Shown: in pieces, positions 13,696 to 49,613 of the stretch
Layout of the letters: each line of letters opens with the position of its first letter
How positions within the stretch are numbered: the first letter of the stretch is position 1
Virus record (IMG/VR): IMGVR_UViG_3300048571_000088
Location: 62,001-126,000 of that record
Length of the DNA stretch: 64,000 nt
Strand: one strand, 5' to 3'
Made by a program: the position numbers and the translations under genes
The notes under the pieces: generated by a model
The model's database searches: none
What the model was told of the DNA's origin: nothing
What the model saw: only the letters and a program-made list of their open reading frames with translations

Positions 13696-14994
13696 TCAAG
13701 CTAGTAACTGATTAAAGCTGTCTGACAAACTTTTCAGTTTAGCAGTAGCTTCTTCTTTACTCGCCTGTTTGTTTGTTTCGGCAATACGGCTGATTTGATA
13801 GATTGGTTCTACCAGTTCACCAAAGAATGAATTCTCTTGGATGAAGTTTTCATGTTGCTTGTAGTTGACTAGTTTGTCACCTACTGGGAAAACTCCTTTA
13901 TTATGGACGCGAAGAAAATCACTACAAGCTTGAAGAATACCTGTTGTGTTTGCCCAATTAATAATTGAGAACATCATTGCAACTTGATCAGGACTTAATT
14001 CTAAATCTTTAGAAAGAATTCGACTGATCTCTTTTTGGTGTTGTGGTTTTGCCATGTTTCGTAAGTACAGTAATTCGAAACTGGAAGAACCTCCTGCGGT
14101 ATGTTTAACACTATCCATTACAAAGTCTTGAAGACCTCGAATATAGATAAATGTTAGTGTTTGATACATTTTATCGGTCAGGCGTAACATTGGAAACTCT
14201 AACTTATCTTGCTTAAAGTTTCCTTTACATTTGATTGCAGTTTTCTGGTACATTTCTGCACACATTGCAAAAACCCAACCATTATTTGTTGCTGGTCCGA
14301 TAGCTGCCTTAGCGTCGCGAGCGTTTAACAGACAATCCATGTAGGAGAGTTTGTATGAACGCTCCTTGAGGTTTAATTCTCTTGCATAAGGCATTTCATG
14401 TAATTGATATACCATTTCTTTGTCGAATAAAGAATCTGCTTCGTATTCGCCTTCTAGGAAGTTTTTATTCCAGTTTAATTCTTCTTGGCAAGGGATCATT
14501 TTAATGTAATCTGGACGATCATCTGCTTGTTTGAAGCAGTAAATGGGCGCTAAATCGCCATCACTATCCGCATGCGAAAAATAGACAATAGATTCTTTGT
14601 CTATTAATATGATATCTTTATTTTTCTCTGTGTCTAGGTAGTTATCAATCAGAATCTTGTGATTATTTGCTAAGTGGTTAGCAAAATCATCTCGACTCCA
14701 GACTCGTAACTCACGGAACATACTCATCCATAGACAAGGGTGTCGCATGAAGTTAAGCTTGAAACCACGAGTTAATTCTGTATACTCTGGTGATTCACAT
14801 TCAGAGAAACAGTATTTATATAACTTTTGATATAATTTACTATCAAAGATTACACATGTGTCTGGCGGAATCAACGCATCTGTTGATTGTTTCTTACTAA
14901 ATCCCATTACTTGTGGGGTTAGCAATGCGTATGTTCCGGTCAAAATCATTCTCCTTGGTTTTGAAAGATGAGTGGAGACATCATAAATCTCCAC
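13696..14994 (-). CDS. two-barrel RNA polymerase, beta'-like catalytic portion (RNAP1 C-half)
   Basis: FMRHPCLW (NRxP-like) and HADSDGD (DxDGD Mg triad, about 14554-14574); in frame with the upstream ORF. Confidence 0.8.
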   Translation of the reverse strand: MEIYDVSTHLSKPRRMILTGTYALLTPQVMGFSKKQSTDALIPPDTCVIFDSKLYQKLYKYCFSECESPEYTELTRGFKLNFMRHPCLWMSMFRELRVWSRDDFANHLANNHKILIDNYLDTEKNKDIILIDKESIVYFSHADSDGDLAPIYCFKQADDRPDYIKMIPCQEELNWNKNFLEGEYEADSLFDKEMVYQLHEMPYARELNLKERSYKLSYMDCLLNARDAKAAIGPATNNGWVFAMCAEMYQKTAIKCKGNFKQDKLEFPMLRLTDKMYQTLTFIYIRGLQDFVMDSVKHTAGGSSSFELLYLRNMAKPQHQKEISRILSKDLELSPDQVAMMFSIINWANTTGILQACSDFLRVHNKGVFPVGDKLVNYKQHENFIQENSFFGELVEPIYQISRIAETNKQASKEEATAKLKSLSDSFNQLLA

Positions 14995-15003
14995 TCTGTT
15001 GGA

Positions 15004-17184
15004 TTACAGTTCTGCACCTTGGTACAGTAACTTGTTAACTTCGTTCAAGTAAGCATTTAACTCTGTGTAACGCTTTTTACTTGGGTCTTGTTCAAACACA
15101 AATAAATAACGTGGAGTACCCATGCAATACTTTAAGATGTTAGAGATACGGATAATAACTTGATGGTAAGTCCAAGTTTTATCAGGGAGTTGGTTTACAA
15201 ACATGTTCAGTGTCTGAGCAGATGGTACTCGGATAACTGGTGCATTGTTGTAATTCATACCTTTAAACGATAACAAGAAGCCGTTTGGATTCCATTCAGG
15301 ATCGAGTAGTTTTGATGTACTCTTGAATGTACTGATTGCTGTTTCAATAAGGTCTTGTTGGGAGAAAACAGAACCTTTTGTTACTGATTTAGCAGAGTAC
15401 ATAGGAAGTTTATCCGTAGGGAACAAACTACCAGTGAGATCAGTTTTGATTTTCATCAATTCATCTACACACTTTTTGTCTGTTTCTGAGACGTACTTAT
15501 CCCAAATGTGCTTCTGTAGAGCTTTGTTACCGTTCTGCGCTAGAAAACGTCCTGTTTCAAACATGAAAGACATTGGTTTTGCTTTACCATAAGTCTGAGC
15601 TAACTCTGTGAAACGAGTATAGACTAGGCCGATGAAGACTTCCGTTTCGAGACCAAATTCGTCAACATAACGAAACTTTGGCAAAGATTTGAAAGCAGCG
15701 TTAACCATCTCCACATTGTTAGCATCAAGAATTCCCCATTTGTTTTTGGGTTTGTAAGTACCCATTTTGACAGCCAATGTAGCTCCAGCCAGTACAATTG
15801 TATTGACTTTAGCTTTGATTGCATTAGCACCTACAGCAAGATCAGGAGTAAGAGAAGGATATGAGCCTTCAAGGAACTCAATGAAACCTAGATTAGGTTT
15901 ACATTTTGTTACTCCCTTTAAACCTGTGTTAGAGTCTATACGTGCATTTCCTGCTGTTTTAGTGAGCAGAAGACGTAGCTTTCTTGCACCTAGGGTACCA
16001 GAATGAGTGAGAGACTCTAACTTGATTTCATTGATATTTTTGACCTCGATTGGTTTATCTTGGACATCAACACCAACAACAAATTTACCTGAAGGACAAT
16101 GGACAGACTCTCCAATCTTCAAGTTGATTTCATTGAACATGTCAGTAATACTAACAGACTGCATAATCTGTTGAGAGACATATTTAGGTGAAGCTTCAAT
16201 TTCACCAGCTAAGAATCGGCCATGACTGGACATACGACAGAATACAACAACAGATTCAGAAAGACAATCATCTCGAGAGACATAAGAATCTGTTGTTGGA
16301 TCGTATAGACAATCTTGAGCGATTACTGAAGTTGCTGGATTTCTTAAAGCAATTGCATCTGAGATTAAATGAGTTTTTAAGCGAGCTACAATGTTCTGAG
16401 CAGGAGGAAAGATTGAAAAGAAACTCTTTCCAGTCTCTTTATATCCTGGCGAACGATATAATGGATTTGATGGGTTATAAGGATGTACGACAAGTTTACC
16501 AGTCATAGAGAAAGAAGACTCTGATGAGGGATGGACTGGTAAGTCTTTAATGACCATTCGACAGGTTTCTGAAGAAGGTTTATAAGCATTTTGTCGTAGA
16601 ATTTCACCTAGTAACCGTAGAGGATGAGTATCTAAGAGTACAGGTTTGAGTTGAGTTGAGTTTAGTCGATCCCAAGGAGACAGGATGACGAAAGTATTTG
16701 ATACTTTCTTGAAGGCATTATAAGCTTTAGGAGTATTGTAATCCATGAAGGCTTGTAAAGCTCCAATGTCACCAGAGAGAAGATAACCGAAAGCTTTTTG
16801 ATCACTTTTGGCGTACTCTGAAAACATGTAAAGACGATGCTGTAATAGCATGTATAGAAGTTGATTCTGGTTAAGAATGCAATTTGAGTTTGTTGAAAAA
16901 TAATCAATCTTTTTGGATGATTTGAAAGATGAAATTTCAAAGAGGAATTTGGGAAATTGGGTTTTTGAAGCTTTTGGATTGTAAATTGAAGCTGAAATTT
17001 CGATTTCAGTGTTTTCTTGATCTGAATTGAAAAGACTCAAAACAAGAAATGTCTGCATTTTTAATTCCCATTTGAATAAAGATTCAAATCCTTTTGGGAT
17101 TAAAAGATCAATTTCAGAAGCATCAAGATTTTCTGGAATAAACGGAACTTCAGAAAAATCGATTGGGCGATTTGTGATTGCCAT
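15004..17184 (-). CDS. two-barrel RNA polymerase, beta-like portion (RNAP1 N-part)
   Basis: GNARIDSNTGLKGV (GDK..HGxKG-like), PDLAVGANAIK and VFIGLVYTRFTE (GxxYxxKL-like). Confidence 0.75.
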   Translation of the reverse strand: MAITNRPIDFSEVPFIPENLDASEIDLLIPKGFESLFKWELKMQTFLVLSLFNSDQENTEIEISASIYNPKASKTQFPKFLFEISSFKSSKKIDYFSTNSNCILNQNQLLYMLLQHRLYMFSEYAKSDQKAFGYLLSGDIGALQAFMDYNTPKAYNAFKKVSNTFVILSPWDRLNSTQLKPVLLDTHPLRLLGEILRQNAYKPSSETCRMVIKDLPVHPSSESSFSMTGKLVVHPYNPSNPLYRSPGYKETGKSFFSIFPPAQNIVARLKTHLISDAIALRNPATSVIAQDCLYDPTTDSYVSRDDCLSESVVVFCRMSSHGRFLAGEIEASPKYVSQQIMQSVSITDMFNEINLKIGESVHCPSGKFVVGVDVQDKPIEVKNINEIKLESLTHSGTLGARKLRLLLTKTAGNARIDSNTGLKGVTKCKPNLGFIEFLEGSYPSLTPDLAVGANAIKAKVNTIVLAGATLAVKMGTYKPKNKWGILDANNVEMVNAAFKSLPKFRYVDEFGLETEVFIGLVYTRFTELAQTYGKAKPMSFMFETGRFLAQNGNKALQKHIWDKYVSETDKKCVDELMKIKTDLTGSLFPTDKLPMYSAKSVTKGSVFSQQDLIETAISTFKSTSKLLDPEWNPNGFLLSFKGMNYNNAPVIRVPSAQTLNMFVNQLPDKTWTYHQVIIRISNILKYCMGTPRYLFVFEQDPSKKRYTELNAYLNEVNKLLYQGAEL

Positions 17185-17229
17185 TTTTACAACTCCTAGA
17201 GAATTTGGAAAGATTTGAAACTCCGATTT

Positions 17230-17373
17230 TTAAGATCGGAATTTGTTCCAGAGGAATTTTACACCTAAAAACAATCCGTAAATGGAAATTGCATCAAGAA
17301 TTCCGATTATAATTGCTGCAGCTATCGGAGAAAATCCTGTAACGCCAAGAATTGTATACCAAAATTCGATCAT
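17230..17373 (-). CDS. 47-aa single-TM microprotein
   Basis: MIEFWYTILGVTGFSPIAAAIIIGIL...; paralog of 17378..17518. Confidence 0.6.
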   Translation of the reverse strand: MIEFWYTILGVTGFSPIAAAIIIGILDAISIYGLFLGVKFLWNKFRS

Positions 17374-17377
17374 GCTT

Positions 17378-17518
17378 TTACACCTTAAGTGAGAGAAGAT
17401 AAAAGAATACGGCAACGGAAATTACTACAAGAATTCCGATCAGAATTGTTGCAGTCATCGGAGAAAATCCTGTTGCAGAAATTGCAACAGTAAGAATTGT
17501 ATTCCAAAATTCTATCAT
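17378..17518 (-). CDS. 46-aa TM microprotein (not in ORF track)
   Basis: Manual translation MIEFWNTILTVAISATGFSPMTATILIGILVVISVAVFFYLLSLKV. Confidence 0.6.
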   Translation of the reverse strand: MIEFWNTILTVAISATGFSPMTATILIGILVVISVAVFFYLLSLKV

Positions 17519-17688
17519 GCTGGTACACCTTGAGTGAGAATCAATGTTACTACTAATAAAGGCAAATAAGCAACAATTGAGAGAAAAGAATACAATACAA
17601 AATGTATTGTTCCGGCTGAAGAGAAAATATACAATCCGAGAATCAATAAACAGAATGCATAAATTGCTATTTGCTTGGTTGAGAACAT
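17515..17688 (-). CDS. 57-aa two-TM microprotein (not in ORF track)
   Basis: MFSTKQIAIYAFCLLILGLYIFSSAG...; ATGA overlap with the next ORF. Confidence 0.55.
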   Translation of the reverse strand: MFSTKQIAIYAFCLLILGLYIFSSAGTIHFVLYSFLSIVAYLPLLVVTLILTQGVPA

Positions 17689-17792: not shown

Positions 17793-17793
17793 T

Positions 17794-18126: not shown

Positions 18127-18187
18127 TATAATCTCCTTTTGGGATTGAAGTGTGAACTTTTGATCATTCACACTTCAAGAAAGAATC

Positions 18188-20803: not shown

Positions 20804-22121
20804 TTATTTAGATATTTCGTATTTATCTTCTAGCCAATTTTTTAAAAAGGTTCTCATTCTTTTGGAAGGTATATACAGATTAATCTCTTCATTGTTTCTT
20901 ATTGCTGATCTCCAAATAAACTGTACCATCTCAGATATAGCATATACATCTTCTTTAACACTAAAGCCCCTAGCTGATGAGGCTTTAACTAATTCAGGAT
21001 TAGGGTAAAGATTAAGAAGGTAAGCTACTGTATGTCGATCTCCATAGTTATTAGTAGCTTTAGTATTCATTGGTAACCATTCATTTGAATAATTGTTGAC
21101 ACCGTTCTTCTGTACTCTTGTTTTACAATCTTTAAAACAAGTCCAGAGTAAATCTGATTTTTTACATTTGGCTTTATTTCTAATGTAATTGTCTAAGTTA
21201 GCAGAAAGTGTGTCTTTGACTGCTGTTTGTTTGCAGTTAGTAGAAGATAAAGCAGATTCTTTACTGCCTGTTTCATTTAATTTCCCTCTTAAAGTGTCTT
21301 CGTAGACATTAATTAGATGTTTTATTTCTGAAGGTTTTTTACCAAATCTGATAACTTCATAATCTAAGCCATGAGCTTTTAAGTAAGTAGCCATGATATT
21401 ATCTTCGAACATGTATGTGGCAATCCATACTTCTTTAAAAGCTTTTAAAGCATTAATTGCAAGTTCCCATATCACTACTTTTCCGTCTATCAGCATTAAC
21501 TGCCCTAAGTCACACAAAGTAGCAAATGTTTCGTAATAAGTATCTTTAGTAGTATCTCTTCCGTTAGAAGTGTCTCCATAATTTTCTCTGTGAAATTTAA
21601 GAGTAATCCCGTCTGTTTCTTCTAGTGTGATCCAACCATTATCAAACATAGCTTTTATTTCTTTCTCATTGTAGACATCATAGATCTCATACACACTTAA
21701 CATCTCATCAATTACTAAGATATAATCTCTAGCCTGCTTAAGTATTTCTGGTGTTAAGTTAACAAAGAGTTGATGAGTACTTACTATGTTATCATTATTC
21801 TTTAATAACTGAGGAAGAGATTCAGCCTTACCTCCTTTATTCGAGAAATAAGGATGTTTGAACACTCTATCTTTAAGAGGAGTTTCTTCTGCTTCGTTAT
21901 ATTGGTACAGTAAAGAAGAATCATCACTCTCTACAATGATCGGCCTTTTATATAAGTCTTCAGGATCATACACTGTTCCTGCAATTCTGTGACACTCTGT
22001 GAGTAGTGGTGTTATAAATATGTACTTTTGAGACATGTCAGAGTTTTTAATATTTTCAATAACCTTAGTTGTTTTGCCTGACCCGCATCATTGCATCGTA
22101 CACTTTAATGTTTGTTTTCAT
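20804..22121 (-). pseudogene. SF2 helicase-like / origin-binding protein, +1 frameshift at 22085 inside Walker A
   Basis: ATG 22121 with SD gives MKTNIKVYDAMM-(extra C)-GSGKTT, then LVIDE (Walker B) and EMVQFIWRSAIR; paralog of 23251..24576. Confidence 0.8.
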
Positions 22122-24576: not shown

Positions 24577-24583
24577 TCTAAAC

Positions 24584-39469: not shown

Positions 39470-39796
39470 TATAGTCTCCTTATAGACTGACGGTGGGTGG
39501 GTACTATCTTTAAATCTATGAATACTAGAGAGATACTAATACCCATAGATTTAAAGGAGGGTAACTTAATACCCTCACATCTGATTTAGAATTCTAAATA
39601 ACCAAGAAAACTACTTTAAATACGTACAAGGTTACCAAATTCATCTTGTACGTAAGGGATACATAGAGTCTTAGTCCATGAGCTATTAGCCCAAGAACCA
39701 ACCCAGTATACACCATTGATATATTCCATAATAATACTCTACAGTCAACCTAAAGCTAATATTTAGAGAGGCTAGCTTATGAATCCTCTTTGGAGA

Positions 39797-40012
39797 CTAT
39801 TCGCCTGCGTACTCTGCTTCCTCAAGTACGAGGAAGACAATCTGGACGAGGCCTAGAGCCTTATCATGCTGCTCCAGACGATATTCCACATCCTCTGGGA
39901 TCTTCCCGAGGATGGTGTCATCCCCGATGTAGAAGCAATCAGAAGCAGGGATAACAACACCTGCTTCTGCCAGTTGGGTACGGATCGCTGCAGCATTGGT
40001 TTGCGCGTTCAT
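39797..40012 (-). CDS. hypothetical acidic early protein
   Basis: AGGAG SD, own leader. Confidence 0.65.
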   Translation of the reverse strand: MNAQTNAAAIRTQLAEAGVVIPASDCFYIGDDTILGKIPEDVEYRLEQHDKALGLVQIVFLVLEEAEYAGE

Positions 40013-40174
40013 GTATTTTCTCCTAATAGATGGGCATGACCCCAGGAAGGTTTGAGAGTTTCAACTGCTCTCACAGACTCTATATTATTTAGTGTGCATT
40101 AAGAGTTCGCACAGACTACAAGAGTTAGGTACACTCAATATCACGTACCTTCGTCCTGTAGGACTTTCTGTCTA

Positions 40175-40513
40175 TCAGCAGTTGTACTCAACCCAGGCTT
40201 GGCTGTACGCAGCTTGTCGTGCGTCGTGCCACTCTTTCAAGTTCACCAATTTCCCCGTCAAACCACCCCGGAAGGTGTCAGAGGTGATCTGAACTTCCAG
40301 TGGCGAATCCGCCGGTGTCTTGAATGTCACAAACCCACAGTTGTACATCTCGGACACCGAGTCCAGCAAGTCGCGGTCTGACTTGCTAACAGCTACGGTA
40401 ACGGGGCGGCCATTGAAGGCCAACTTCATTGAAGAAGTTATTTCGACCACGTCCCCAACTCTCTGAGTTGTATTCTTGTACATGATGTATTCTCCTTGAT
40501 TGATGGGCAGCAC
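40175..40513 (-). CDS. hypothetical protein, paralog of 38398..38733
   Basis: Shared motifs; likely start MYKNT. Confidence 0.75.
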   Translation of the reverse strand: MLPINQGEYIMYKNTTQRVGDVVEITSSMKLAFNGRPVTVAVSKSDRDLLDSVSEMYNCGFVTFKTPADSPLEVQITSDTFRGGLTGKLVNLKEWHDARQAAYSQAWVEYNC

Positions 40514-40595
40514 CCCAAGCTTAAAACTTCTTTACATATAAAACCCATAAGAGAGTCTCATATGTAAAGAAGGGGCGCAGGAGCACCCCAACTTT

Positions 40596-40808
40596 TTAAC
40601 ACACCTTCAATTCGTCCCCACAGTCAATACAAGCATAATACTCGTATTGATTTGTCATCCGGGAGAAGACACAGACGTGTCCGCAATGACAACGGAAGAA
40701 GTTACCCTCTTCGTTGATCTCTGCTACGGTCTGCACCTCTCCTTCGAGCTTTGCAGGTATTTTGGTGTACATGACGTTAGCCATATAGTAAAGTAACTCC
40801 ATTAACAA
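40596..40808 (-). CDS. small Zn-finger protein
   Basis: CHCGH...CIDCG. Confidence 0.6.
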   Translation of the reverse strand: MLMELLYYMANVMYTKIPAKLEGEVQTVAEINEEGNFFRCHCGHVCVFSRMTNQYEYYACIDCGDELKVC

Positions 40809-40840
40809 TGTGAGAAATTAAAAAGGTTTCTCACTTACCT

Positions 40841-41092
40841 TTAAACAATCTCAGTGAATGACTTTTCAGTCGTATCATAAGAGAATGTCTTAATACCTTG
40901 ATGACGGAGTGTCTGTAGTGCCTCATCAGCAGTACCAGCACTCATTACCACATTTTTCACCCCGAAGGATGAAATCTCTTCGGCGAACTTAATCGCTGCT
41001 TCAGAAGAATCAAGACGAACTTGATCCATCGAGACCACTTCCACCTCTACAGCAGAAGAAATTTCAACACCAAGAAAAACATAGATCTTCAT
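40841..41092 (-). CDS. hypothetical protein
   Basis: 83-aa ORF. Confidence 0.6.
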   Translation of the reverse strand: MKIYVFLGVEISSAVEVEVVSMDQVRLDSSEAAIKFAEEISSFGVKNVVMSAGTADEALQTLRHQGIKTFSYDTTEKSFTEIV

Positions 41093-41103
41093 AATGACCC
41101 CCC

Positions 41104-41460
41104 TTAGTACTGATAAGCAGTGAGTCGGAGCAGATCTTCAACCACTTCAGAATCAATTACATCTGAAGGGAGAAAACATACATCCCACCCTTGTACACCT
41201 ACAATCTCCCCGTACTTAATATGTAACAGGGAAACATAGGCTCCGTAATTACGAGCAAACTCTTTCTTCTCAGCTACAGAGAGGTCAGAGTAGTACTCAA
41301 AGGTCATAGCATGAAGCCATTGACCTTCTGCTACAGAATTACCTACTGTAGCATCTGGAGTCTTAGAGAAACGAACAACGTAAACATCGTTCAATTTCTC
41401 ACCAACACCCCAAGGATGTCCTATTGCGGAGTCCATCCAGTCATGGTCATGAGCGTACAT
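41104..41460 (-). CDS. hypothetical protein
   Basis: 118-aa ORF, GGAG SD. Confidence 0.65.
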   Translation of the reverse strand: MYAHDHDWMDSAIGHPWGVGEKLNDVYVVRFSKTPDATVGNSVAEGQWLHAMTFEYYSDLSVAEKKEFARNYGAYVSLLHIKYGEIVGVQGWDVCFLPSDVIDSEVVEDLLRLTAYQY

Positions 41461-41556
41461 AACAGTACTCCGACAAAAAGAATCAAACTTATAAGTACTA
41501 ACCAGGAATACTTATAAGTTTGATTGAGGGTTTCTTATAACCCTCAAAATACCAGC

Positions 41557-41808
41557 TTAGCTATGATTAGGGTGTATAGCGGTTGATCCGTCAGTGGCAG
41601 TCACTTGTACGTACCACGAGCGAGGACAATCCTCTGCATCTGCCATCACTTCGTAAGGCACGGCAATCGCCTCGCATGTGTCGACGAACATGGATTGATG
41701 AATGACGGCGGCATCCTTGTAGTCGCCGTCGAATCCCATGAAGTACTCATCATGGTACTTCTGCGCCTCTACTTCTATTTTCGAGACCAACTGCTCTGCC
41801 ATGTTCAT
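41557..41808 (-). CDS. hypothetical acidic protein
   Basis: 83-aa ORF, GGAG SD. Confidence 0.65.
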   Translation of the reverse strand: MNMAEQLVSKIEVEAQKYHDEYFMGFDGDYKDAAVIHQSMFVDTCEAIAVPYEVMADAEDCPRSWYVQVTATDGSTAIHPNHS

Positions 41809-42127
41809 ACTACATCTCCAAGACCAAAGAAAGGTGGTCAGCCTGTAATACTTCTTTATAGTTTATATCCATAGAAGAATACAATCTATAAAGAAACATG
41901 AGGTGAGAGAAACTGATCAAAAAGTAACCAGTTCTCTCACCTCCTCCTTAGATTCATCCTACCAACATCCAGTAGAACAAACCTAAAAATAATAAGAAAA
42001 TAATAAGAACAGATAACCATCCATTATTACTTTCTATCTTATCCTGATAATTCTTCATAAGAACACCTAAGATTAAGAAAGAGACTAATACATTTAATTA
42101 TACAGGCTGTATTCCCACCTGTAACCC

Positions 42128-42523
42128 TTACTTTACTGACATCAAGTACTCAATAACGTCAGCGAGGAGTTGTGGGTGCTCCTCAAGTTTGATCATACGG
42201 TGTCCGTACTCAACGAAGTCTTCCAACTTCAAAGATACGAGTGCAGCAGCACGCTCAACAATACCTTCATAGGAATTGCTGTCCACGACGTCTCCGTGGA
42301 AGTAGACTGCCATCGCAACGATAGCAAATTCTACTTCCATCTCTGCATGTACAGCAGAACTGCACCCATGTACCAGACGGTCAGACTGCACGTACACATT
42401 AAGCATACGTGCAGAAGTCCCAAATCCGTATACGAATTTATCATATACGGCAATTGGGGTATCCCCTACTACAGGGGCGTACGGGTCGTTGGTGACCCCA
42501 GCCATGTATCCCATATTGGACAC
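42128..42523 (-). CDS. hypothetical acidic protein
   Basis: 131-aa ORF, AAGGAG SD. Confidence 0.7.
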   Translation of the reverse strand: MSNMGYMAGVTNDPYAPVVGDTPIAVYDKFVYGFGTSARMLNVYVQSDRLVHGCSSAVHAEMEVEFAIVAMAVYFHGDVVDSNSYEGIVERAAALVSLKLEDFVEYGHRMIKLEEHPQLLADVIEYLMSVK

Positions 42524-42650
42524 TCCTTAACTCTGTGTGAGATTCAAAGGTTCTCACACTCTACCTTATTACATACTCTATATGTACTAAACACTAATAC
42601 ACATAAGTATATAAGATCAGTTTATACACTTGATCAGGTGTTGATCTGTT

Positions 42651-43331
42651 TCAGGAATGATCCCAAAACAGATCTGCGAACCACTCGGCAGTTGCTTGGA
42701 AGCTGCCATCTTCCTTACATCCGGCAATGTCTGCGCGGATGGCAGCTTCGGCTGCTTTGTTCCGGCCGACAACTCGCTGCCCTTTACGAGCAGCCATGTA
42801 GCTAGTGACAGCCGCAGGGACTGTCCATCCAGCTTTCTTATCTTCCCACTCGCACAGGAAGAGCTTGTAGCCTTCTTCGCGAGCAGCAGTTTCCACCCCC
42901 TCTGCTACTACAGGGGATGATGAAGGGATCACCACTTCTTGGTGATCTTTTCCTGCTGCCATTGCTTCGAATTTCTCGACAATGGCAAAGAATGCCTTCC
43001 GAGACACAGCAATTTCAGTCGTGTCATACTTGGACTCGCTAGTGCAAGCCCATAAGGTGAATCCGACTTTCCAGCCTGTGTCGGATTGATCACAAGGGAC
43101 ACTGATTTGCATCCCCTGTGCGAAGGTGAATGGTGCATTGTGATCAACAATGCGCACCTTGTTGCCCAGCATCTCTGCTGGCGTCAAGGCCATTACAGCC
43201 TCATTTGTTGCCAACACGGCAACAAGTTTGGCAGCTTTTTTGGCCGCCAGTTCGTCTTCGGTCGGCGGAGCAACATAGCTCTCATCCGCCACCCGACAAC
43301 CATAACGGTCATCGTACTGAAAATATGCCAT
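42651..43331 (-). CDS. hypothetical early protein
   Basis: 226-aa ORF, GGAGAATACATTATG leader. Confidence 0.7.
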   Translation of the reverse strand: MAYFQYDDRYGCRVADESYVAPPTEDELAAKKAAKLVAVLATNEAVMALTPAEMLGNKVRIVDHNAPFTFAQGMQISVPCDQSDTGWKVGFTLWACTSESKYDTTEIAVSRKAFFAIVEKFEAMAAGKDHQEVVIPSSSPVVAEGVETAAREEGYKLFLCEWEDKKAGWTVPAAVTSYMAARKGQRVVGRNKAAEAAIRADIAGCKEDGSFQATAEWFADLFWDHS

Positions 43332-43482
43332 AATGTATTCTCCAAAACTTGTGTGAGATTAATGAGGGTTCTCACACTTAACCCTAAACAAATATATAAA
43401 TACCAGTAAGTACCTGATACTCATATATTTATTAACTCTAATTAGAAGGATAGAGTTAATCCTTTGTTCAAGTGTACCGAGC

Positions 43483-43857
43483 TTATACAGCCCAGTACAT
43501 ACCAACGTGTTTAAAGACCGAAGTCTTACGCACACCTCCATTACCATCAGGCACGTCAACTGACACTCGGTCAGTGCAAGCGTACCCAACCCGATATCCA
43601 GCAGCTTGCAAAACTTCTTGCAGAACTGGCATGAAACTTGGCATGCCTCCGATCATAACGTGCCCACAGTCAATCCGCGCATCTTTCACAAGCCCAAGAA
43701 CCCGCTTAGCACGGGAGACAAGCTCCTCGTGGTCATAAATCGCAGGGAAGGTGATTGCCGCAACAAGCGCAGCTTTCAAATCACCTTGAAGATCGATGAC
43801 ACCAGACGCCAGTTGATCTTCAGTCGCGGCGTGTTGAGTCAGATTCAAAATGTTCAT
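43483..43857 (-). CDS. Csx20-like small Rossmann-fold protein, putative cyclic-oligoadenylate ring nuclease
   Basis: LNLTQH, ITFPAI, VMIGG, GY.V.YACTDR and KTSVFKH match the Csx20 pattern as recalled (N.TNH, PFP.V, V...GE, GI.V.AAC.ER, K...F.F). Confidence 0.6.
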   Translation of the reverse strand: MNILNLTQHAATEDQLASGVIDLQGDLKAALVAAITFPAIYDHEELVSRAKRVLGLVKDARIDCGHVMIGGMPSFMPVLQEVLQAAGYRVGYACTDRVSVDVPDGNGGVRKTSVFKHVGMYWAV

Positions 43858-43985
43858 AATGTATTCTCCATAATGACGGGCATCACCCCGAGTACTTTTA
43901 GATGAGGGAGTAATAAAACCCTCTAGGAATTATTCCACATATAGGTACTAGATTTCTCCAATACCTATAAATTGAATAATTAAGC

Positions 43986-44501
43986 TCATTGAGTAATAAA
44001 GGAGAGCTTTACACCTTCAGATGACGTCTCGCTTAAAGAAGATAAAGCATCAAAGCAAGCCTTAGCTTTACTCTTATACTTTAAAGCTTCTTTCTCAGGA
44101 TCAAGTCCAAGTATGGTACGAGTAAACTCAGCACCATACTCAGTAATCCGAGAATTATCAAGAGCATCATATGCTTTAACCAACAAAGCAATACGATTAC
44201 CACTTGATAACAAGCGATTCAATGCAGTCTCAGAAGTTTCACCTTCCATCTTAGTAACAAGACGTAAAGCTTCCTTCCCTTCATCTGTACTCAAGAACTT
44301 ATAACAGTCCTCAAATACATATGAAGTATCCTCGACTACATCATGAAGAACAGCTACAACTAGTGAATCACCAGTGTAACCATCCTTCCTCATCAGACCA
44401 TACACCCTAAGAGGATGATTGATGTATGGTTCTTCATCTCCTCTTCTCATCTGACCTTCATGTGCCAGACGAGAAAAAGAGATAACTTCTTGTATTCCCA
44501 T
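43986..44501 (-). CDS. HD-domain (p)ppGpp hydrolase-like protein (small alarmone hydrolase / Mesh1-like)
   Basis: AHEGQ.R...PYINHP...AVLHDVVEDT...LVKAYDALDN. Confidence 0.9.
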   Translation of the reverse strand: MGIQEVISFSRLAHEGQMRRGDEEPYINHPLRVYGLMRKDGYTGDSLVVAVLHDVVEDTSYVFEDCYKFLSTDEGKEALRLVTKMEGETSETALNRLLSSGNRIALLVKAYDALDNSRITEYGAEFTRTILGLDPEKEALKYKSKAKACFDALSSLSETSSEGVKLSFITQ

Positions 44502-44545
44502 AGTACCTCCAAGGGATAAACAAGAAACTCGAACATTTAATTACC

Positions 44546-44568
44546 CAGAGGCTGTTCAACCACCTCTG
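44546..44568 (-). terminator. hairpin between the SAS-like and SAH-like genes
   Basis: CAGAGG-11 nt-CCTCTG. Confidence 0.4.
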
Positions 44569-44584
44569 TCAGATTCAGACACTA

Positions 44585-45136
44585 CTAACTACGTTTCCAC
44601 GCATCAGTGTAAATCTGAATCTGACGACGAACAAGGCGTTCCATTGCCTTAAATTCGTCGGAGTCAAGCTCATCAGCATACAAATGAGCTTGAGCCACGA
44701 GGGAACGCTGTCCCTCGTACAACCGATGTCCATAATCCTTGGCCTGGATCATGGCAACGGTATTGATTTGCAGCTCGCAGATCATACCGTCAATCGTGAC
44801 ATATACCAAAATGTCACGGTACATCGGAGCAGGGACATTCACCCCTGCTCGGAGCCAGTTTCTCTTAACCGTAACTGGTAAAACGGTGGTGATTGCAGCC
44901 AGCACTTCCTGTGCTTCTGCCGCTGTGGTTACCACTAGGGTTCCACGAACAGCATCTTTCAGGCGACTGCAATCACCTTTGTAGTCCGCCAGAACCTTTT
45001 CCATGGCTCTGGCGTAGCTTTTGATCGGTGCCAACATAACATCAGCACCAATCTGCCCGGCAACCTTGGTGACCACGGAGTCAAACTCCGCTTTAACCTT
45101 AGCTGCCGAAGCTAGCAAATCAATCAGTTCTTGCAT
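44585..45136 (-). CDS. RelA/SpoT-type nucleotidyltransferase (small alarmone synthetase-like)
   Basis: PIKS..RA.EK, KDAVRG, YRD and CELQINT...GH.LYE correspond to the SYN motifs. Confidence 0.8.
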   Translation of the reverse strand: MQELIDLLASAAKVKAEFDSVVTKVAGQIGADVMLAPIKSYARAMEKVLADYKGDCSRLKDAVRGTLVVTTAAEAQEVLAAITTVLPVTVKRNWLRAGVNVPAPMYRDILVYVTIDGMICELQINTVAMIQAKDYGHRLYEGQRSLVAQAHLYADELDSDEFKAMERLVRRQIQIYTDAWKRS

Positions 45137-45209
45137 AGAACCTCCTGATCAATTGTATGTGAGATTTACAAAAGGTTCTCACACATAACCTAATTTCTTA
45201 CTTTTATAA

Positions 45210-45296
45210 TCACCCAAAAAGGATAAGTATAAAAGTAAGAAAAGACAGTTTACTGACATGTCTAGGTCGTATGGCTCTGCGTTTACGACGTTTCAT
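45210..45296 (-). CDS. 28-aa basic-then-hydrophobic micropeptide
   Basis: MKRRKRRAIRPRHVSKLSFLTFILILFG with AGGAG SD; degenerate copy at 38061-38107. Confidence 0.4.
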   Translation of the reverse strand: MKRRKRRAIRPRHVSKLSFLTFILILFG

Positions 45297-45549
45297 GAGA
45301 AACTCCTGCAGAGGGATAGAGTGTTTAATAAGGTACACTCTAATGAGACCTAATTACTTTAATATTTAATGAGGTAAAGTAAGAAAACCTCAAGAAATCA
45401 ATTCTGCTCTGCATCTAGCGCGGTGAGCACCAGAACATGAAGCAGAATTGAAATCAAAACATAAGCGAGAACGCCCATATTAAAAACTCCAAAACAACAA
45501 TAAGGTTCTCTACTTAAAAAGGTGAGAGAACACAACCTACGTCTCAAGC

Positions 45550-45753
45550 TTAACGACCAAGAATCTCGTTAAGCTTGAGACGGCAACGATTTGCCTTACG
45601 ATGAAGACGGTCACGATCTTCATCGTCTTCCTGGGAGTTGCAATCCCAAGAGTCTTCCCATCCGTGGGAAGAGGTAGTTTCGAGATCCTCGCGAACCTCG
45701 TGGATCTGTCTTACCAACAGATCCGAATACTCTAGGCGAGTCACGGAAGACAC
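45550..45753 (-). CDS. hypothetical acidic/basic small protein
   Basis: 67-aa ORF. Confidence 0.55.
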   Translation of the reverse strand: MSSVTRLEYSDLLVRQIHEVREDLETTSSHGWEDSWDCNSQEDDEDRDRLHRKANRCRLKLNEILGR

Positions 45754-46147
45754 TCCATAAGAAGGTAAGCGGAGATTATGGCTTCCGCTTGTAGCCGTCA
45801 GAGAGCATTTGACTCCAGTAGGTAAAAGAACCTACAAAGAGAAAATGCCTCCAAGAGGATAAACCTCAAAAGAACCATAAGGCTCTTTCGGAGTCAACCC
45901 TCAAGAAGGGCATGATGGTCGCGCCAAACCCAGACCACCCCAAGTGAGGAATCGGAGGCGCGACCGCGAGCGCACGAGCACAATATGACACTAAGCCATA
46001 AGACGGTCGAGGCACGGAGTCACCAGTCCACATTTGTCTGGTGTATAGCGAGTAGCGAGCGGAGTAAGTGTTTTCTTTAACTACAACCCAACTCAGTACT
46101 TGTTCTTTTGGCTGCCATCTTCAGTACTAGGGAACCACCACTAGTAG

Positions 46148-46167
46148 ACTGCCCCTCCCAGGGCAGT
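46148..46167 (-). terminator. GC hairpin after RNAP2
   Basis: ACTGCCC-ctccca-GGGCAGT. Confidence 0.5.
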
Positions 46168-46178
46168 TTCGGCTTGTA

Positions 46179-49100
46179 TTAAGGTTTAATTGCTACCGCT
46201 GCATTCAAGAGATACGCTTGAATGCTTTGGTTAACAACTACCTCAGGTCTTGACATCAGCTCAGTCACGTCACCGATCTTCGATACCTTATTCAGGTTAC
46301 CAAAGACCAGCTCCATGGCATCTACGTTGACTTTTGCATCATGCCCAACAGCAGCAAGTGCATGTACCATCAACGTAAGGATGATGATGTCCATCCCTTT
46401 GGCAGAAACGTTATACTCTTTCTGCAATTCCGCCGAGTAGAACATCTTCTCGAACGAAATCTGATAAGCTTCGCGCAAGCTTACAACTTCTGCTACCTTT
46501 TCAGATAACATTTTAGCTTGACGTTGCTTAATTACAGTGAGTAACGCTCCTGCATTATTGGCAAGGAGTTCCTCGGAATCCCATGCATACATTTGTACCC
46601 AAGCTTTCGCTTCAGCTTCAGTATACACAGGGGCGATACGGGCACAACTTTGGGGTGACATTACCTTCGCCAACATCTTGGCTGCCATCTCCCCAATTGC
46701 CCGTTTGATTCGATCCATCGAATCGCTTTGGGTTGCTCCACCCTGCAGATTTACCAGTGAGCGTACAACAGCCTTCACTAGTTTATCATACACATGTGCC
46801 ATACCAGCCACATTCTTACGGATACCTACCCGCATCAGCATAGTTGCTGGCAGATAGGAACCCGAAAGGAGCACCTCTTTTACAACTTTACGTGCCAAGT
46901 CCTCACGGCTCTGCGTCAATTGTTGCGCATGGGTGAAGAGTCCGACGTTACCACGTGCCAGACCAGCCTTTACAACAGCCTTGGTGATGTCTTCCCATGT
47001 ATGCAACACATGGGTAACCACTTTCGGCACCAATGGTGTCCACAAACCTTCCAATTCCGCTTTCACGAAATCAATGGTAGCTTGAGCCACTGGGTTGACA
47101 CTTTCGTCCAACGGTGCATCTTGTTGAACGACCTTACCAAGCCCATCCTTCAGAATAGACTTGTTTGGAACAAGGTAGACGCTACCTGTGTCCCCGTCAC
47201 CGTCATCCTGCCCATGCAATACGAACATTGCATTGTGCAGTTGTGCAGTACCCATCAAGATTGCATCTAAAGAAGACTGAACCTTGTTTCGCACTACCCA
47301 CACACGGCGAACAGCATTGGCCATGATGGTTGGAGGCTTGGCGAACACCGCACCAACACCTGAAGAGTAGCTCTTGCAGGCGCTGTGGTACTGCTCATCA
47401 AGCACAGGAGATGCAACTTCACCGTACCCGAGACTCCACGACGAGACGATCAGACCCGTCGACCCGTGGGCATGAACCTGCCCAAGTTGCTTGCCAAGAA
47501 CACTGTTCCGACATTCCAAGATACTCTCTTTCAAGATACCCCAGACTGTCTCTGTTCTTCCTGAAGCGTCGATAGTGGTAGTGTACCACACCGCCTCAAG
47601 TATGGCAGCAAGCAGACCTTGCGTTTTGATCAGAGTGCCTTTGTTGGACACACTGACCAGTTTTTCCAATACCTTGGTACCAGGGAAGATCATCTCAGTC
47701 CCGTCTGGGAACTGAAGATTTGCCCACTCGGCATCACCAAGTTGGAACAACTGCGCAATGACAATCTCGCCATGCAGGGTCATTCCATGGTCACGCTCCA
47801 ACCAGTTCTTTTCCTTACGAACTTCGTGAAGCGTGTTTACCATATCTTCCATATTAACATCGAAGATGTCTTTACGGTCGATGGTGCCCGGGTGTAGCAA
47901 CTTGAAAGCCAGTTGCAGTTGCTCAACATCAGCTCCTGCTTTCTCACCTTCAAGTACAGCATTTACAAATGCTTCAGCTTGGTCAGTACCATAGTTGGAG
48001 CTGATAGACTGAAGCATTTGTACGTTAGTTTTGACGCTAACGTTTTTACGACGGATTTCTCCGGCTCCAACTAACTCTAGCAGGCTTTCTGCTAGAGTTA
48101 TTCCTCTTTGCTGCGACAACGCAAAGGCTCGTTTTGTAACCGAACCCTTGTTTGCAAGGCCAGTGCAACGATGCACAGCAACTTGACAGAACGACTCAAA
48201 CCCTACCGATTCTTCTGGTACGAGTTCGAACACTGCGCAAGCTGCTGACTCAGTGATGCGGTAATCAGCATCACGTACTATCGCAACAGAGATAACATCT
48301 CCATTGGTCAGTGTTGCATCTTGCCACGGAAGGCTGGCTTTTGACGCAGCAGCTTTCACCGCTGTGTACGGCAGAATGACAATGTTAGTGTCACACTCCA
48401 TCGTCAACAACTCAGCCACCACATCAGCTTCGCGGATCAATGGATCAACCACATCTTCCACGTAGGCTAGACCAACCTTCTGACCCAGCACAGCAAACCC
48501 AACACAGCGAACTGCACCGAATTGATGCCAAGCGTGGGTGTTGAAGCCACCTGAGCCGATTGCACCACTAGCTTCAACCGCCTTGACGGTCTCTGCTTGG
48601 TACTGGCCTCGCTTGGTGCTATCTAAAGCGTACACCACCGTTGTAGCAGTGAACGGGATAGTACCATCATCCGTCGTGCCTTTCACTTGCTTCGATAGAC
48701 GAGCAATCAGTTTTTCAACCGACTCTGCCGAAACAATCCCATCTGCATCTGGTGCTGCGAATACGTTCGCTTTCCGGATATACGAATCCAGTTTTTGAAC
48801 GTACCCATGCTTTTCATGATTTTCAGCATGAAGGCTTGCACCGAAGCCTTTCTTACTGAGAGTCTCTGTTACAGCAGACTCTCCTTCATTCCAGATACCT
48901 TTCAGGACAGTTCCTGTTGGGCCATCTAGAACAACACACATGGCAGGATTAGCTCTTAATCCTGCCAGTTCCACACCGGCCTTATGCGCTAACAGAGCGT
49001 CAATAACGACTCCATTTTTGCTAGGCTGTGCGTTTTTGTCCAGCACAATGATCTGCTCTTTTTCAGCGATCAGGATAAGTTTGGTCATCTTTTCGACAGG

Positions 49101-49613
49101 CAAGATGACCCCAGCCTTCTTGCTATCCTTCCTTACGACCCGCAGATTGAATCCGTTAGGATGCCCGATGTGGAAGTCCCAGACAGACTTGTGTTGCTCA
49201 AGCCCTGCTTCTGGTTGGAGCAACTGCATAGCAGCAAGGAGGATCTGTGGCAACGCTGTTTCCAGCTCTAACGGCAACCCCAAAGCTAGCGACTCACCAG
49301 CTTTCACTGATTCCCATGCCTGTCTCAGAGGTGTCTTGATGTAACGTTTCTCTCCTTTTAGTCCAAGAGTTGTTGCACGATCTTGGAGCAGACTACGAAC
49401 CCGGATACGACAGGCATTCCGAAGCGATACAACTTGCTCCGATTGCGTACCCAGGTTCTGGGTGGTTGTGACCAACTCAGCCAGGTTATGGCAATGAGTG
49501 ATCAATGATACCAAAGCCCGGTTACGGTCTTCTGCCGCTGTATCGTGAGACGTTGTCTCATCGATGTAAGCGACCAGAGCCTCGAGGGTCTTGATGTTGG
49601 TGTTAGTAGTCAT
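46179..49613 (-). CDS. single-chain two-barrel RNA polymerase-like protein (RNAP2)
   Basis: Beta-like GQKVG / IVILPYTAVKA / DYRITE, then beta'-like FAKPP and HGQDDGDGD (DxDGD, about 47190-47216); collinear with 13696..17184. Confidence 0.75.
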   Translation of the reverse strand: MTTNTNIKTLEALVAYIDETTSHDTAAEDRNRALVSLITHCHNLAELVTTTQNLGTQSEQVVSLRNACRIRVRSLLQDRATTLGLKGEKRYIKTPLRQAWESVKAGESLALGLPLELETALPQILLAAMQLLQPEAGLEQHKSVWDFHIGHPNGFNLRVVRKDSKKAGVILPVEKMTKLILIAEKEQIIVLDKNAQPSKNGVVIDALLAHKAGVELAGLRANPAMCVVLDGPTGTVLKGIWNEGESAVTETLSKKGFGASLHAENHEKHGYVQKLDSYIRKANVFAAPDADGIVSAESVEKLIARLSKQVKGTTDDGTIPFTATTVVYALDSTKRGQYQAETVKAVEASGAIGSGGFNTHAWHQFGAVRCVGFAVLGQKVGLAYVEDVVDPLIREADVVAELLTMECDTNIVILPYTAVKAAASKASLPWQDATLTNGDVISVAIVRDADYRITESAACAVFELVPEESVGFESFCQVAVHRCTGLANKGSVTKRAFALSQQRGITLAESLLELVGAGEIRRKNVSVKTNVQMLQSISSNYGTDQAEAFVNAVLEGEKAGADVEQLQLAFKLLHPGTIDRKDIFDVNMEDMVNTLHEVRKEKNWLERDHGMTLHGEIVIAQLFQLGDAEWANLQFPDGTEMIFPGTKVLEKLVSVSNKGTLIKTQGLLAAILEAVWYTTTIDASGRTETVWGILKESILECRNSVLGKQLGQVHAHGSTGLIVSSWSLGYGEVASPVLDEQYHSACKSYSSGVGAVFAKPPTIMANAVRRVWVVRNKVQSSLDAILMGTAQLHNAMFVLHGQDDGDGDTGSVYLVPNKSILKDGLGKVVQQDAPLDESVNPVAQATIDFVKAELEGLWTPLVPKVVTHVLHTWEDITKAVVKAGLARGNVGLFTHAQQLTQSREDLARKVVKEVLLSGSYLPATMLMRVGIRKNVAGMAHVYDKLVKAVVRSLVNLQGGATQSDSMDRIKRAIGEMAAKMLAKVMSPQSCARIAPVYTEAEAKAWVQMYAWDSEELLANNAGALLTVIKQRQAKMLSEKVAEVVSLREAYQISFEKMFYSAELQKEYNVSAKGMDIIILTLMVHALAAVGHDAKVNVDAMELVFGNLNKVSKIGDVTELMSRPEVVVNQSIQAYLLNAAVAIKP

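What the first reader, a model, noticed from the sequence alone, without database searches (positions are those of the whole stretch)
13696..49613. Two highly divergent single-chain two-barrel RNA polymerases in one phage
Both 46179..49613 (1144 aa) and the in-frame pair 17184->13696 (about 1160 codons if read through) carry beta-type then beta'-type double-psi-barrel motifs in the same order. The paired motifs are GLKG/GQKVG, AIKA/AVKA, TRFTE/YRITE, RHP/KPP and HADSDGD/GQDDGDGD. Cellular-type or phiKZ-type enzymes use separate subunits with NADFDGD; known single-chain examples such as SPbeta YonO or crAss-type enzymes are, as far as I recall, single-copy. RNAP2 is the first large gene beside the putative genome end in a GC-richer region, while RNAP1 sits mid-arm in its own operon. 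This suggests a two-stage phage transcription system built from two paralogous single-subunit enzymes with unusual catalytic loops.
Basis: partly seen in the sequence, partly recalled or inferred. Interest (0 to 1): 0.9.

Follow-up and report, generated by a model that had tools for sequence, protein, structure and literature searches.

The report
Two divergent phage two-barrel RNA polymerases
A roughly 243-kb jumbo phage, distantly related to Acinetobacter phage ME3, encodes two very different and so far unannotated RNA polymerases of the cellular "two-barrel" type, one of them split into two subunit genes, so it probably runs much of its own transcription.

Summary
Both loci exist as described and all ten motifs are present. 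Each locus belongs to a protein family that keeps a beta-type lysine pair, an (R/K)xP motif and an invariant DxDGD loop.

High-confidence AlphaFold models were searched with Foldseek. RNAP1 was modelled through a fused 1147-aa relative, and its listed hits are RNA polymerase chains, mainly second-largest subunits (E from 6.5e-7). RNAP2 was modelled directly. Its hits are beta' chains, plant RDR2, an AR9 subunit and crAss-like phage proteins, but with weaker statistics.

The interpretation needs three corrections:
- **RNAP1 here is not one chain.** The stop is a conserved gene split into a beta-like gene (726 aa) and a beta'-like gene (at most 432 aa). In three of four sequenced relatives the second gene lies in another frame. 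More distant relatives are fused.
- **Two divergent two-barrel enzymes in one phage already has a precedent**, Thermus phage P23-45.
- **The two are barely related.** hhalign gives E 1e-5, only over the beta' barrel, so recent paralogy is not shown.

The temporal roles are inferred, not shown. Extras: hammerhead ribozymes bracket the RNAP2 unit, and relatives carry group I introns in the RNAP1 DxDGD codons. Both families lack Pfam, PHROG and PDB sequence hits.

The parts
15004..17184 (-). RNAP1 beta-like subunit gene (726 aa). It holds the beta-type barrel lysines K423 (GLKG) and K457 (AIKA) and ends in TAA at 15006-15004.
   Evidence: It has 51 homologues. The fused homologue P0011 was modelled at pLDDT 89.7, and its top Foldseek hits are Rpb2/beta chains.
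13696..14994 (-). RNAP1 beta'-like subunit gene (432 aa from GTG 14994, or 417 aa from ATG 14949). RHP lies at 14737-14745 and the catalytic DSDGD at 14554-14568.
   Evidence: It matches profile positions 721-1139 of the fused family, with no intron.
13660..13687 (-). Terminator-like hairpin (12-bp stem followed by a T run), 9 nt after the stop of the RNAP1 beta'-like gene.
46179..49613 (-). RNAP2, a single-chain two-barrel polymerase-like protein (1144 aa). K379 and K420 form the beta-type pair, AKPP the (R/K)xP motif, and DGDGD lies at 47190-47204.
46106..46174 (-). Hammerhead ribozyme type II, 5 nt after the RNAP2 stop codon.
   Evidence: Rfam RF02276, 56.2 bits (gathering score 37), E 6.6e-9. 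The core CUGANGA, GAAA and GUC elements are present.
50281..50335 (-). Hammerhead ribozyme type III-like, in the leader of the ORF155-RNAP2 unit.
   Evidence: Rfam RF00008, 43.8 bits (below the gathering score of 48.5), E 2.9e-6. Similar elements lie upstream of RNAP2 homologues in L005 and L024.
49657..50124 (-). 155-aa ORF directly upstream of RNAP2, GC 0.59, function unknown.
   Evidence: no family hit, and no similarity to the genes that precede RNAP2 homologues.
50392..50580 (-). 62-aa GC-rich ORF with a Shine-Dalgarno sequence, upstream of the type III hammerhead. It is the first ORF of the leftward arm.
50777..50928 (.). 5.6 perfect copies of a 27-bp tandem repeat, at the point where leftward (non-structural) and rightward (tail and head) genes diverge.
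40810..45182 (-). Four copies of a GTGAGA...TCTCAC hairpin (40810-40834, 42537-42557, 43353-43375, 45159-45182). Each lies about 15-30 nt upstream of an early-arm start codon, downstream of RNAP2.
   Evidence: 4 found against 0.05 expected.

Best explanation
The window comes from a roughly 243-kb jumbo myophage distantly related to Acinetobacter phage ME3. It encodes two different polymerases of the two-barrel (double-psi beta-barrel) superfamily.

RNAP1 is made from two adjacent genes, a 726-aa beta-like subunit and a beta'-like subunit of at most 432 aa. The two products must assemble so that the lysines of the first barrel face the DxDGD magnesium loop of the second. Relatives carry the same enzyme as one fused chain of about 1150 aa.

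RNAP2 is a single 1144-aa chain with both barrels.

Inferred, not shown: RNAP2 lies at the head of the leftward non-structural arm, in a GC-rich block, and its message is trimmed by hammerhead ribozymes on both sides. It would therefore be made first and would transcribe the small early genes downstream. RNAP1 lies about 33 kb further along, followed directly by a terminator-like hairpin. It would act later, on middle or late genes. Together they would give the phage a largely host-independent transcription cascade.
For: Family conservation of the catalytic motifs.

AlphaFold models:
- RNAP1 family, fused relative P0011 (44% identical to the 726-aa gene product; 46% and 37% to the two pieces in the alignment): pLDDT 89.7, pTM 0.86.
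- RNAP2 of the window itself: pLDDT 83.5, pTM 0.83.

Foldseek:
- RNAP1 model: 77 PDB hits at E<=1e-3. Of the 50 listed, 49 are second-largest RNAP subunits and one is a bacterial beta' chain, with a best E of 6.5e-7.
- RNAP2 model against PDB: the top 50 hits are all bacterial beta' chains, maize RDR2 or the AR9 nvRNAP subunit 7s01_d (prob 0.99).
- RNAP2 model against BFVD: best E 1.6e-5. The hits include crAss-like phage proteins, ME3 gp036, P23-45, nudivirus and giant-virus RNAP subunits.

The two family profiles align over (R/K)xP ... DxDGD ... AKxN(I/V)G (E 1e-5).

The split is real. The same linker break occurs in five relatives, in a different frame in three of the four read as DNA. ME3 gp152 runs straight across that position.

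Gene position and strand layout. RNAP2 homologues also sit at the head of strings of small genes. Hammerheads. Terminator-like hairpin. Precedent for an early-gene RNAP starting a cascade: P23-45 gp64 (PMC10770324).
Against: - No activity, expression-timing or virion data exist.
- The RNAP2 Foldseek E-values against PDB are weak (2e-3 to 4e-2, none at or below 1e-3).
- The RNAP1 structural evidence rests on a relative, not on the window's own two chains.
- No shared promoter motif was found that would assign genes to either enzyme.
- I could not test whether the two families occur together in other phages. ME3 lacks the RNAP2 family, and the contigs carrying RNAP2 homologues are short.
- Most of the 242.6-kb contig lies outside the window, so further polymerase genes cannot be excluded.
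Confidence: 0.6

Rival explanations
1. RNAP2 is a virion polymerase. It would be packaged and injected with the DNA to transcribe the first genes, as in N4, crAss-like phages and P23-45 gp96, and RNAP1 would be the non-virion enzyme.
For: The RNAP2 model hits fragments of crAss-like phage giant proteins and the C-terminal half of ME3 gp036, a tail-module protein. Hairpins upstream of the early genes recall N4 early promoters (the N4 comparison rests on my own knowledge).
Against: The gene lies at the head of the non-structural arm, not in the structural module. It is not fused to a large virion protein. Its homologues sit in the same early-type context. Virion polymerase genes are usually expressed late.
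Confidence: 0.2
2. The RNAP1 stop is read through or suppressed, or is an assembly error, so that a single chain of about 1160 aa is made.
For: The two ORFs are in frame here and in L011. The 15 codons after the stop still resemble the ME3 linker. Fused relatives exist.
Against: Five relatives stop at slightly different codons of the same linker. In L021, L022 and L023 the second ORF is in another frame, 45-110 nt away. No suppressor tRNA was found in the window. TAA is a poor read-through codon (my own knowledge).
Confidence: 0.08
3. One of the two, more likely RNAP2, is a two-barrel enzyme with a different job. It could be an RNA-dependent RNA polymerase of the QDE-1/RDR type, a primase-like enzyme or a PolD-like DNA polymerase, rather than a transcriptase.
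For: Maize RDR2 is among the PDB hits of RNAP2 (ranks 13 and 23). Nothing in the sequence fixes the template or product type.
Against: Most hits are DNA-dependent RNAP beta' chains and phage or virus RNAPs. The position at the head of an early arm fits a transcriptase. Phage relatives of QDE-1 that have been tested (YonO, crAss gp66) are DNA-dependent (PMC5467207, PMC10770324).
Confidence: 0.1
4. The motif matches are coincidental and one or both proteins are not polymerases.
For: There is no Pfam, PHROG or PDB sequence hit. The RNAP2 PDB E-values are weak.
Against: The motifs are invariant across families of 19-22 diverged sequences. The models are confident. Every top structural hit is a two-barrel polymerase. 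The two families cross-match at exactly the catalytic barrel.
Confidence: 0.03

Closest known systems
Thermus phage P23-45 gp96 (tape-measure-fused virion RNAP) plus gp64 (non-virion RNAP) (PMC10770324)
   Same: One phage carries two highly divergent two-barrel RNAPs. One of them is encoded by a very early gene and starts a cascade.
   Different: Both P23-45 enzymes are single chains, and one is fused to the tape measure protein. Here one enzyme is split into two genes and neither is fused to a tail protein. There is no sequence-level similarity: the PDB profile searches found nothing, and the BFVD hit to a P23-45 protein has only E 0.048. The host and the genome size class also differ.
Acinetobacter phage vB_AbaM_ME3 gp152 + gp154 (annotated 'hypothetical protein')
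   Same: These are true homologues of RNAP1: 35% and 33% identity, E 1e-100 and 5e-60. They lie in the same arm of a syntenic jumbo genome.
   Different: The ME3 gene is continuous across the window's split point. It is interrupted instead at the RxP motif by an insert carrying an endonuclease gene, gp153. ME3 has no RNAP2-family gene. I found no paper that calls these ME3 proteins a polymerase.
[quoted passage not shown]
   Same: A protein of about 100 kDa with both barrels, beta-type first, lacking most of the accessory domains of cellular RNAP.
   Different: Neither family profile shows similarity to YonO (hhalign prob below 1%). RNAP1 here is two chains.
crAss-like phage phi14:2 gp66 virion RNAP (PDB 6VR4) and related crAss proteins
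   Same: Fold-level resemblance for RNAP2: BFVD hits to fragments of crAss-like giant proteins, E 6.5e-4 to 2e-2.
   Different: RNAP2 is a free-standing 1144-aa protein in an early-type context and is not part of a giant virion protein. There is no sequence hit to 6VR4.
phiKZ/AR9-type multisubunit phage RNAPs (PMC7598289)
   Same: Jumbo phages with their own beta/beta'-derived enzymes, in two sets. The beta and beta' modules are on separate polypeptides, as in the window's RNAP1. An AR9 nvRNAP subunit is a Foldseek hit of RNAP2 (7s01_d, prob 0.99).
   Different: The phiKZ/AR9 enzymes have four or five polypeptides that are recognisable by sequence as beta/beta' fragments. Here there are one or two polypeptides with no Pfam RNAP domain hit.

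Membership tests
Two-barrel (double-psi beta-barrel) RNA polymerase superfamily | A beta'-type barrel carrying the DxDxD (DxDGD) metal-binding loop. | tested here: met
   DSDGD in RNAP1 and DGDGD in RNAP2. The loop is invariant in 19 and 22 family members respectively. The two families align at this barrel.
Two-barrel (double-psi beta-barrel) RNA polymerase superfamily | A beta-type barrel supplying two conserved basic residues. | tested here: met
   In RNAP1, K423 and K457 correspond to the invariant K419 and K452 of the fused family. In RNAP2, K379 is invariant and K420 is conserved in at least 90% of sequences. The in-register alignment of the two pairs is only marginal.
Two-barrel (double-psi beta-barrel) RNA polymerase superfamily | Overall fold similar to solved RNAP large subunits. 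| tested here: met
   RNAP1 family model: 77 PDB hits at E<=1e-3, and the 50 listed are all RNAP chains (49 second-largest subunits, one beta'). RNAP2 model: the top 50 PDB hits are all two-barrel polymerases, but with E 2e-3 to 4e-2. The best BFVD hit has E 1.6e-5. The evidence for RNAP2 is therefore weaker.
Two-barrel (double-psi beta-barrel) RNA polymerase superfamily | The two barrels face each other so that the lysines and aspartates form one active site. | not testable with these tools
   Model coordinates are not exposed. No complex prediction of the two RNAP1 chains was possible.
Two-barrel (double-psi beta-barrel) RNA polymerase superfamily | Template-dependent RNA synthesis. | not testable with these tools
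   This needs biochemistry.
YonO-like single-chain RNAPs | Detectable sequence homology to SPbeta YonO. | tested here: not met
   hhalign of each family profile against YonO gave prob 0.06% and 0.13%. tblastn against 50,697 phage records found only ME3 and PBAB25 for RNAP1 and nothing for RNAP2.
phiKZ/AR9-type multisubunit phage RNAPs | Sequence-recognisable beta/beta' fragments (Pfam RNA_pol_Rpb1/Rpb2 domains) on four or five polypeptides. | tested here: not met
   No Pfam RNAP domain was found in any piece or in any of the 22 RNAP2-family members. The enzymes have one or two polypeptides only.
crAss-like gp66-type virion RNAPs | An RNAP module embedded in a giant virion protein of the structural block. 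| tested here: not met
   RNAP2 is a free-standing 1144-aa ORF at the head of the non-structural arm. The fold-level hits to crAss-like proteins show resemblance only.
P23-45-type two-RNAP cascade | An injected virion RNAP transcribes the gene of a second, non-virion RNAP. | not testable with these tools
   No virion proteome or transcriptome is available. A candidate tail-module RNAP exists in ME3 (gp036). It was not found on the window's contig with the patterns used.

The most novel reading that the evidence does not exclude
ME3-like jumbo phages may run a host-independent transcription programme on up to three unrelated, so far unannotated lineages of two-barrel RNA polymerase:
- the RNAP1 family, which exists in nature both as one fused chain and as a beta-like/beta'-like pair, and is repeatedly invaded by group I introns at its catalytic codons;
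- the RNAP2 family, whose message is cut out of a longer transcript by flanking hammerhead ribozymes;
- a gp036-type enzyme in the tail module.

In this reading RNAP2 would recognise the hairpin elements upstream of the early genes.
Probability: 0.25. Interest if true: 0.85.

Novelty: new variant of a known kind. Interest (0 to 1): 0.62.

Why it matters
**Two new dark families.** Phage two-barrel RNA polymerases are the smallest relatives of the cellular transcription enzyme. They are used to ask how the multisubunit enzyme arose and what its minimal core is. This locus adds two families that sequence-based annotation misses completely.

**A natural fusion/fission series.** Within the RNAP1 family the beta-like and beta'-like modules occur fused in some phages and as two genes in others. 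That is a natural experiment on the single-chain to multisubunit transition.

**Reannotation of ME3-type phages.** ME3-type jumbo phages have so far been described without any RNA polymerase of their own. These findings suggest that they do carry one.

**RNA elements.** The hammerheads around RNAP2 and the introns inside the DxDGD codons of relatives are testable examples of RNA-level control of a polymerase gene.

Tried and rejected
**Searches that found nothing**
- Pfam and PHROGs on all three ORFs, and Pfam on all 22 RNAP2-family members.
- PDB sequence-profile searches with both families.
- BLASTP between RNAP2 and the RNAP1 pieces, and hhalign of the RNAP1 profile against the single RNAP2 sequence. 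Only profile against profile gave a signal.
- The word-indexed search of 5.8 billion proteins for RNAP2. The exhaustive HMMER search then found 24 relatives.
- hhalign of the gp036 family against either window family, and of ME3 gp187 against the RNAP2 family.

**Co-occurrence of the two families**
- ME3 has no RNAP2-family gene.
- IMG/VR holds RNAP2 only on the window's own contig.
- The contigs carrying RNAP2 homologues are too short to tell, and none has RNAP1 within 10 kb.

**Other tests**
- A k-mer search of 40 intergenic regions found no shared promoter motif. Only the hairpin family emerged.
- Sigma-70-like promoter counts equal the shuffled expectation.
- No conserved partner gene lies upstream of RNAP2.
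- Pseudogene and read-through readings of the RNAP1 stop were rejected on the relatives' frames and on the retained invariant residues.
Full report
**1. What is in the sequence**

The finding covers two loci on the minus strand. ORF 46179..49613 encodes 1144 aa. ORF 15004..17184 encodes 726 aa and ends in TAA. Three codons later, in the same frame, ORF 13696..14994 begins. It is 432 aa from a GTG, and an ATG lies 15 codons further in at 14949. The GC rise around RNAP2 is real, 0.49-0.51 against about 0.38. It is part of a gradient: GC3 is about 0.5-0.65 at the head of the leftward arm, about 0.3-0.4 in mid-arm, and about 0.2 in the structural genes.

**2. Which phage this is**

The window belongs to a 242,588-bp IMG/VR contig, with RNAP2 at about 108-112 kb. 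The only cultured relative is the jumbo myophage Acinetobacter phage vB_AbaM_ME3 (234.9 kb). Window 13.7-19.4 kb matches ME3 222-233 kb, and window 60.4-62.7 kb matches ME3 3.8-5.9 kb. The window therefore spans the place where the ME3 record begins and ends. It holds about 35 kb that ME3 lacks, including the whole RNAP2 block. Genes to the right of 50.9 kb encode tail fibres, a lysozyme-like baseplate piece and a head-closure protein. Genes to the left are small and mostly of unknown function.

**3. The RNAP1 family**

The 726-aa product has 51 homologues in metagenomes. About 19 of them are single chains of 1130-1250 aa that continue through the whole beta'-like part.

A fused member, P0011, stood in for the window's RNAP1. 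It is 44% identical to the 726-aa product by BLASTP, and 46% and 37% identical to the two pieces in the alignment. Modelled with a 52-sequence alignment, it reached pLDDT 89.7 and pTM 0.86. Foldseek against the PDB gave 77 hits at E<=1e-3. Of the 50 listed, 49 are second-largest RNAP subunits (Rpb2, RPC2, beta, poxvirus and ASFV homologues) from E 6.5e-7, and one is a bacterial beta' chain, 4xln_D. The window's two pieces keep 100 of the 106 residues that are invariant in the fused proteins, including both lysines, the P of RHP and DxDGD.

**4. The RNAP1 stop codon is a gene split**

- The five closest relatives all end in the same linker, at slightly different codons.
- In L011 the next ORF starts with an ATG 3 nt after the stop and is in frame.
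- In L021, L022 and L023 the next ORF is 45-110 nt downstream and in a different frame.
- ME3 gp152 runs straight through this position.

The split is therefore an old, selected feature of this clade. The enzyme here is a beta-like plus beta'-like pair, while more distant relatives are fused. A 12-bp terminator-like hairpin followed by a T run lies 9 nt after the second gene.

**5. Introns in relatives of RNAP1**

Other family members break exactly at conserved motifs: RxP, DxDGD, AKxxIG and KH. In L011, L021, L022 and L023 the break at DxDGD is a group I intron (Rfam RF00028, 71-92 bits against a gathering score of 50). ME3 carries an endonuclease gene, gp153, in its break at RxP. The window's copy has no intron.

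**6. The RNAP2 family**

Neither the word-indexed search nor tblastn against phages found anything. The exhaustive HMMER search found 24 relatives, mostly 1145-1360 aa and at most 35% identical. In the 22-sequence alignment K379, T454, K759, P761 and D804-x-D806-G807-D808 are invariant.

The window's own protein was modelled at pLDDT 83.5 and pTM 0.83. Its top 50 PDB hits are all bacterial beta' chains, maize RDR2 or the AR9 non-virion RNAP subunit 7s01_d (prob 0.99). The E-values are only 2e-3 to 4e-2. Against BFVD the best hit has E 1.6e-5 over 1066 columns. Other hits include crAss-like phage proteins, the second half of an ME3 protein, a P23-45 protein, and nudivirus and giant-virus RNAP subunits. 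I read this as good, but not overwhelming, evidence for a two-barrel polymerase.

**7. How the two families relate**

Profile against profile, they align only over the beta' barrel: (R/K)xP, DxDGD and AKxN(I/V)G, with prob 82% and E 1e-5. A restricted comparison of the beta barrels puts GLKG on GQK and AIKA on the S-x-K-S column in register, but only at E 1e-3 and prob 21%. TRFTE and YRITE did not align. Structurally, RNAP1 is closest to multisubunit-type beta subunits, and RNAP2 to phage single-chain types and RDR. The two share the superfamily, but a recent duplication is not shown. Neither profile matches YonO.

**8. Context of RNAP2**

Reading leftwards on the minus strand, the order is:
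1. a perfect 27-bp x 5.6 tandem repeat (50777-50928);
2. a 62-aa ORF (50392-50580);
3. a type III-like hammerhead (50281-50335; 43.8 bits, below the gathering score; E 2.9e-6);
4. a 155-aa ORF (49657-50124);
5. RNAP2 (46179-49613);
6. five nucleotides after its stop, a type II hammerhead (46106-46174; 56.2 bits against a gathering score of 37).

Type III-like hammerheads also lie upstream of the RNAP2 homologues in L005 and L024. RNAP2 homologues always head a run of small genes on the same strand. Four intergenic regions downstream of RNAP2 carry a GTGAGA...TCTCAC hairpin, against 0.05 expected by chance.

**9. Literature**

Thermus phage P23-45 already shows two divergent single-chain two-barrel RNAPs in one phage: a tape-measure-fused virion enzyme and an early-gene non-virion enzyme (PMC10770324). 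The arrangement as such is therefore not unprecedented. A survey of 224 jumbo phages reports barrel-type RNAPs only in its group 1 and in two group 3 phages. It places ME3 in group 2.2 (PMC7824862). The held text of the P23-45 paper's supplementary files contains neither 'Acinetobacter' nor 'ME3'. Papers on ME3 mention no polymerase. As far as I could find, both families are unannotated.

**10. Proposed mechanism, and its limits**

Shown:
- the conserved motifs;
- confident models with RNAP-type fold hits;
- the gene split;
- the gene order;
- the ribozyme and terminator predictions.

Inferred:
- RNAP2 is made first and reads the early genes.
- The RNAP1 pair assembles and acts later.
- Hammerhead cleavage frees the RNAP2 message.

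The alternative, that RNAP2 is a virion enzyme, cannot be excluded. I could not examine model coordinates, fold the window's own RNAP1 pair, or see the rest of the contig.

Noticed in passing
window 46106-46174 (-) and 50281-50335 (-); L005 495-549 and 1097-1151; L024 1033-1087: Hammerhead ribozymes bracket the ORF155-RNAP2 unit. A type II hammerhead lies 5 nt after the RNAP2 stop (56.2 bits), and a type III-like one lies in the leader (43.8 bits, below the gathering score). Type III-like hammerheads also lie upstream of RNAP2 homologues on two other contigs.
   Followed up: partly
L011 8604-8973, L021 7620-8012, L022 7831-8201, L023 6839-7213; ME3 (L001) 8117-9453: In four relatives, group I introns (Rfam RF00028, 71-92 bits) interrupt the RNAP1 beta'-like gene exactly at the DxDGD codons. 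Other relatives break at RxP, AKxxIG and KH, and ME3 carries an endonuclease gene in its RxP break. The window's copy has no intron.
   Followed up: partly
ME3 gp036, L006 33172-37983 (+); L016 8001-13163: ME3 gp036 is a 1603-aa protein in the tail module, between a tape-measure-like protein and the baseplate hub. BFVD fragment A0A172Q021_2 (802 residues, which I take to be the second half of gp036 from its length) is a Foldseek hit of the RNAP2 model (E 2.8e-4). The gp036 family keeps TREPAQG and GDxDQD invariant, which makes it a candidate virion two-barrel RNAP. It co-occurs with a fused RNAP1 on IMGVR_UViG_3300008122_000001. It was not found on the window's contig with the patterns used.
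   Followed up: partly
window 40810-40834, 42537-42557, 43353-43375, 45159-45182: A conserved hairpin (GTGAGA, 9-13 nt, TCTCAC) lies about 15-30 nt upstream of four early-arm start codons. Four copies were found against 0.05 expected. Other intergenic regions nearby hold different GC-rich hairpins. These could be promoters, processing sites or translational elements.
   Followed up: partly
window 50777-50928; 50146-50175 and 50600-50669: A 27-bp unit is repeated 5.6 times without a mismatch at the divergence point of the two arms. A two-part motif (CTGTACTAGGCAG ... GGTGTAATGAGCC) is repeated upstream of the first two ORFs of the leftward arm.
   Followed up: no
window 39500-50700 compared with the rest: GC3 is graded along the leftward arm: about 0.5-0.65 in the first 11 kb, about 0.3-0.4 in mid-arm and 0.12-0.25 at the far end and in the structural genes. 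RNAP2 homologues elsewhere are also somewhat GC-richer than the DNA downstream of them.
   Followed up: partly
window 595-668 (-): ARAGORN calls a tRNA-Phe with anticodon AAA, which is unusual, since GAA is the norm.
   Followed up: no
window 20804-22036 (-) and 23251-24576 (+): Two divergently oriented paralogues of about 410-440 aa both match phrog_2467 (function unknown; E 4e-80 and 2.5e-68), with about 1.2 kb of mostly non-coding DNA between them.
   Followed up: no
window 17230-17530 (-): Two tandem small hydrophobic ORFs, both starting MIEFW, lie directly upstream of the RNAP1 beta-like gene.
   Followed up: no
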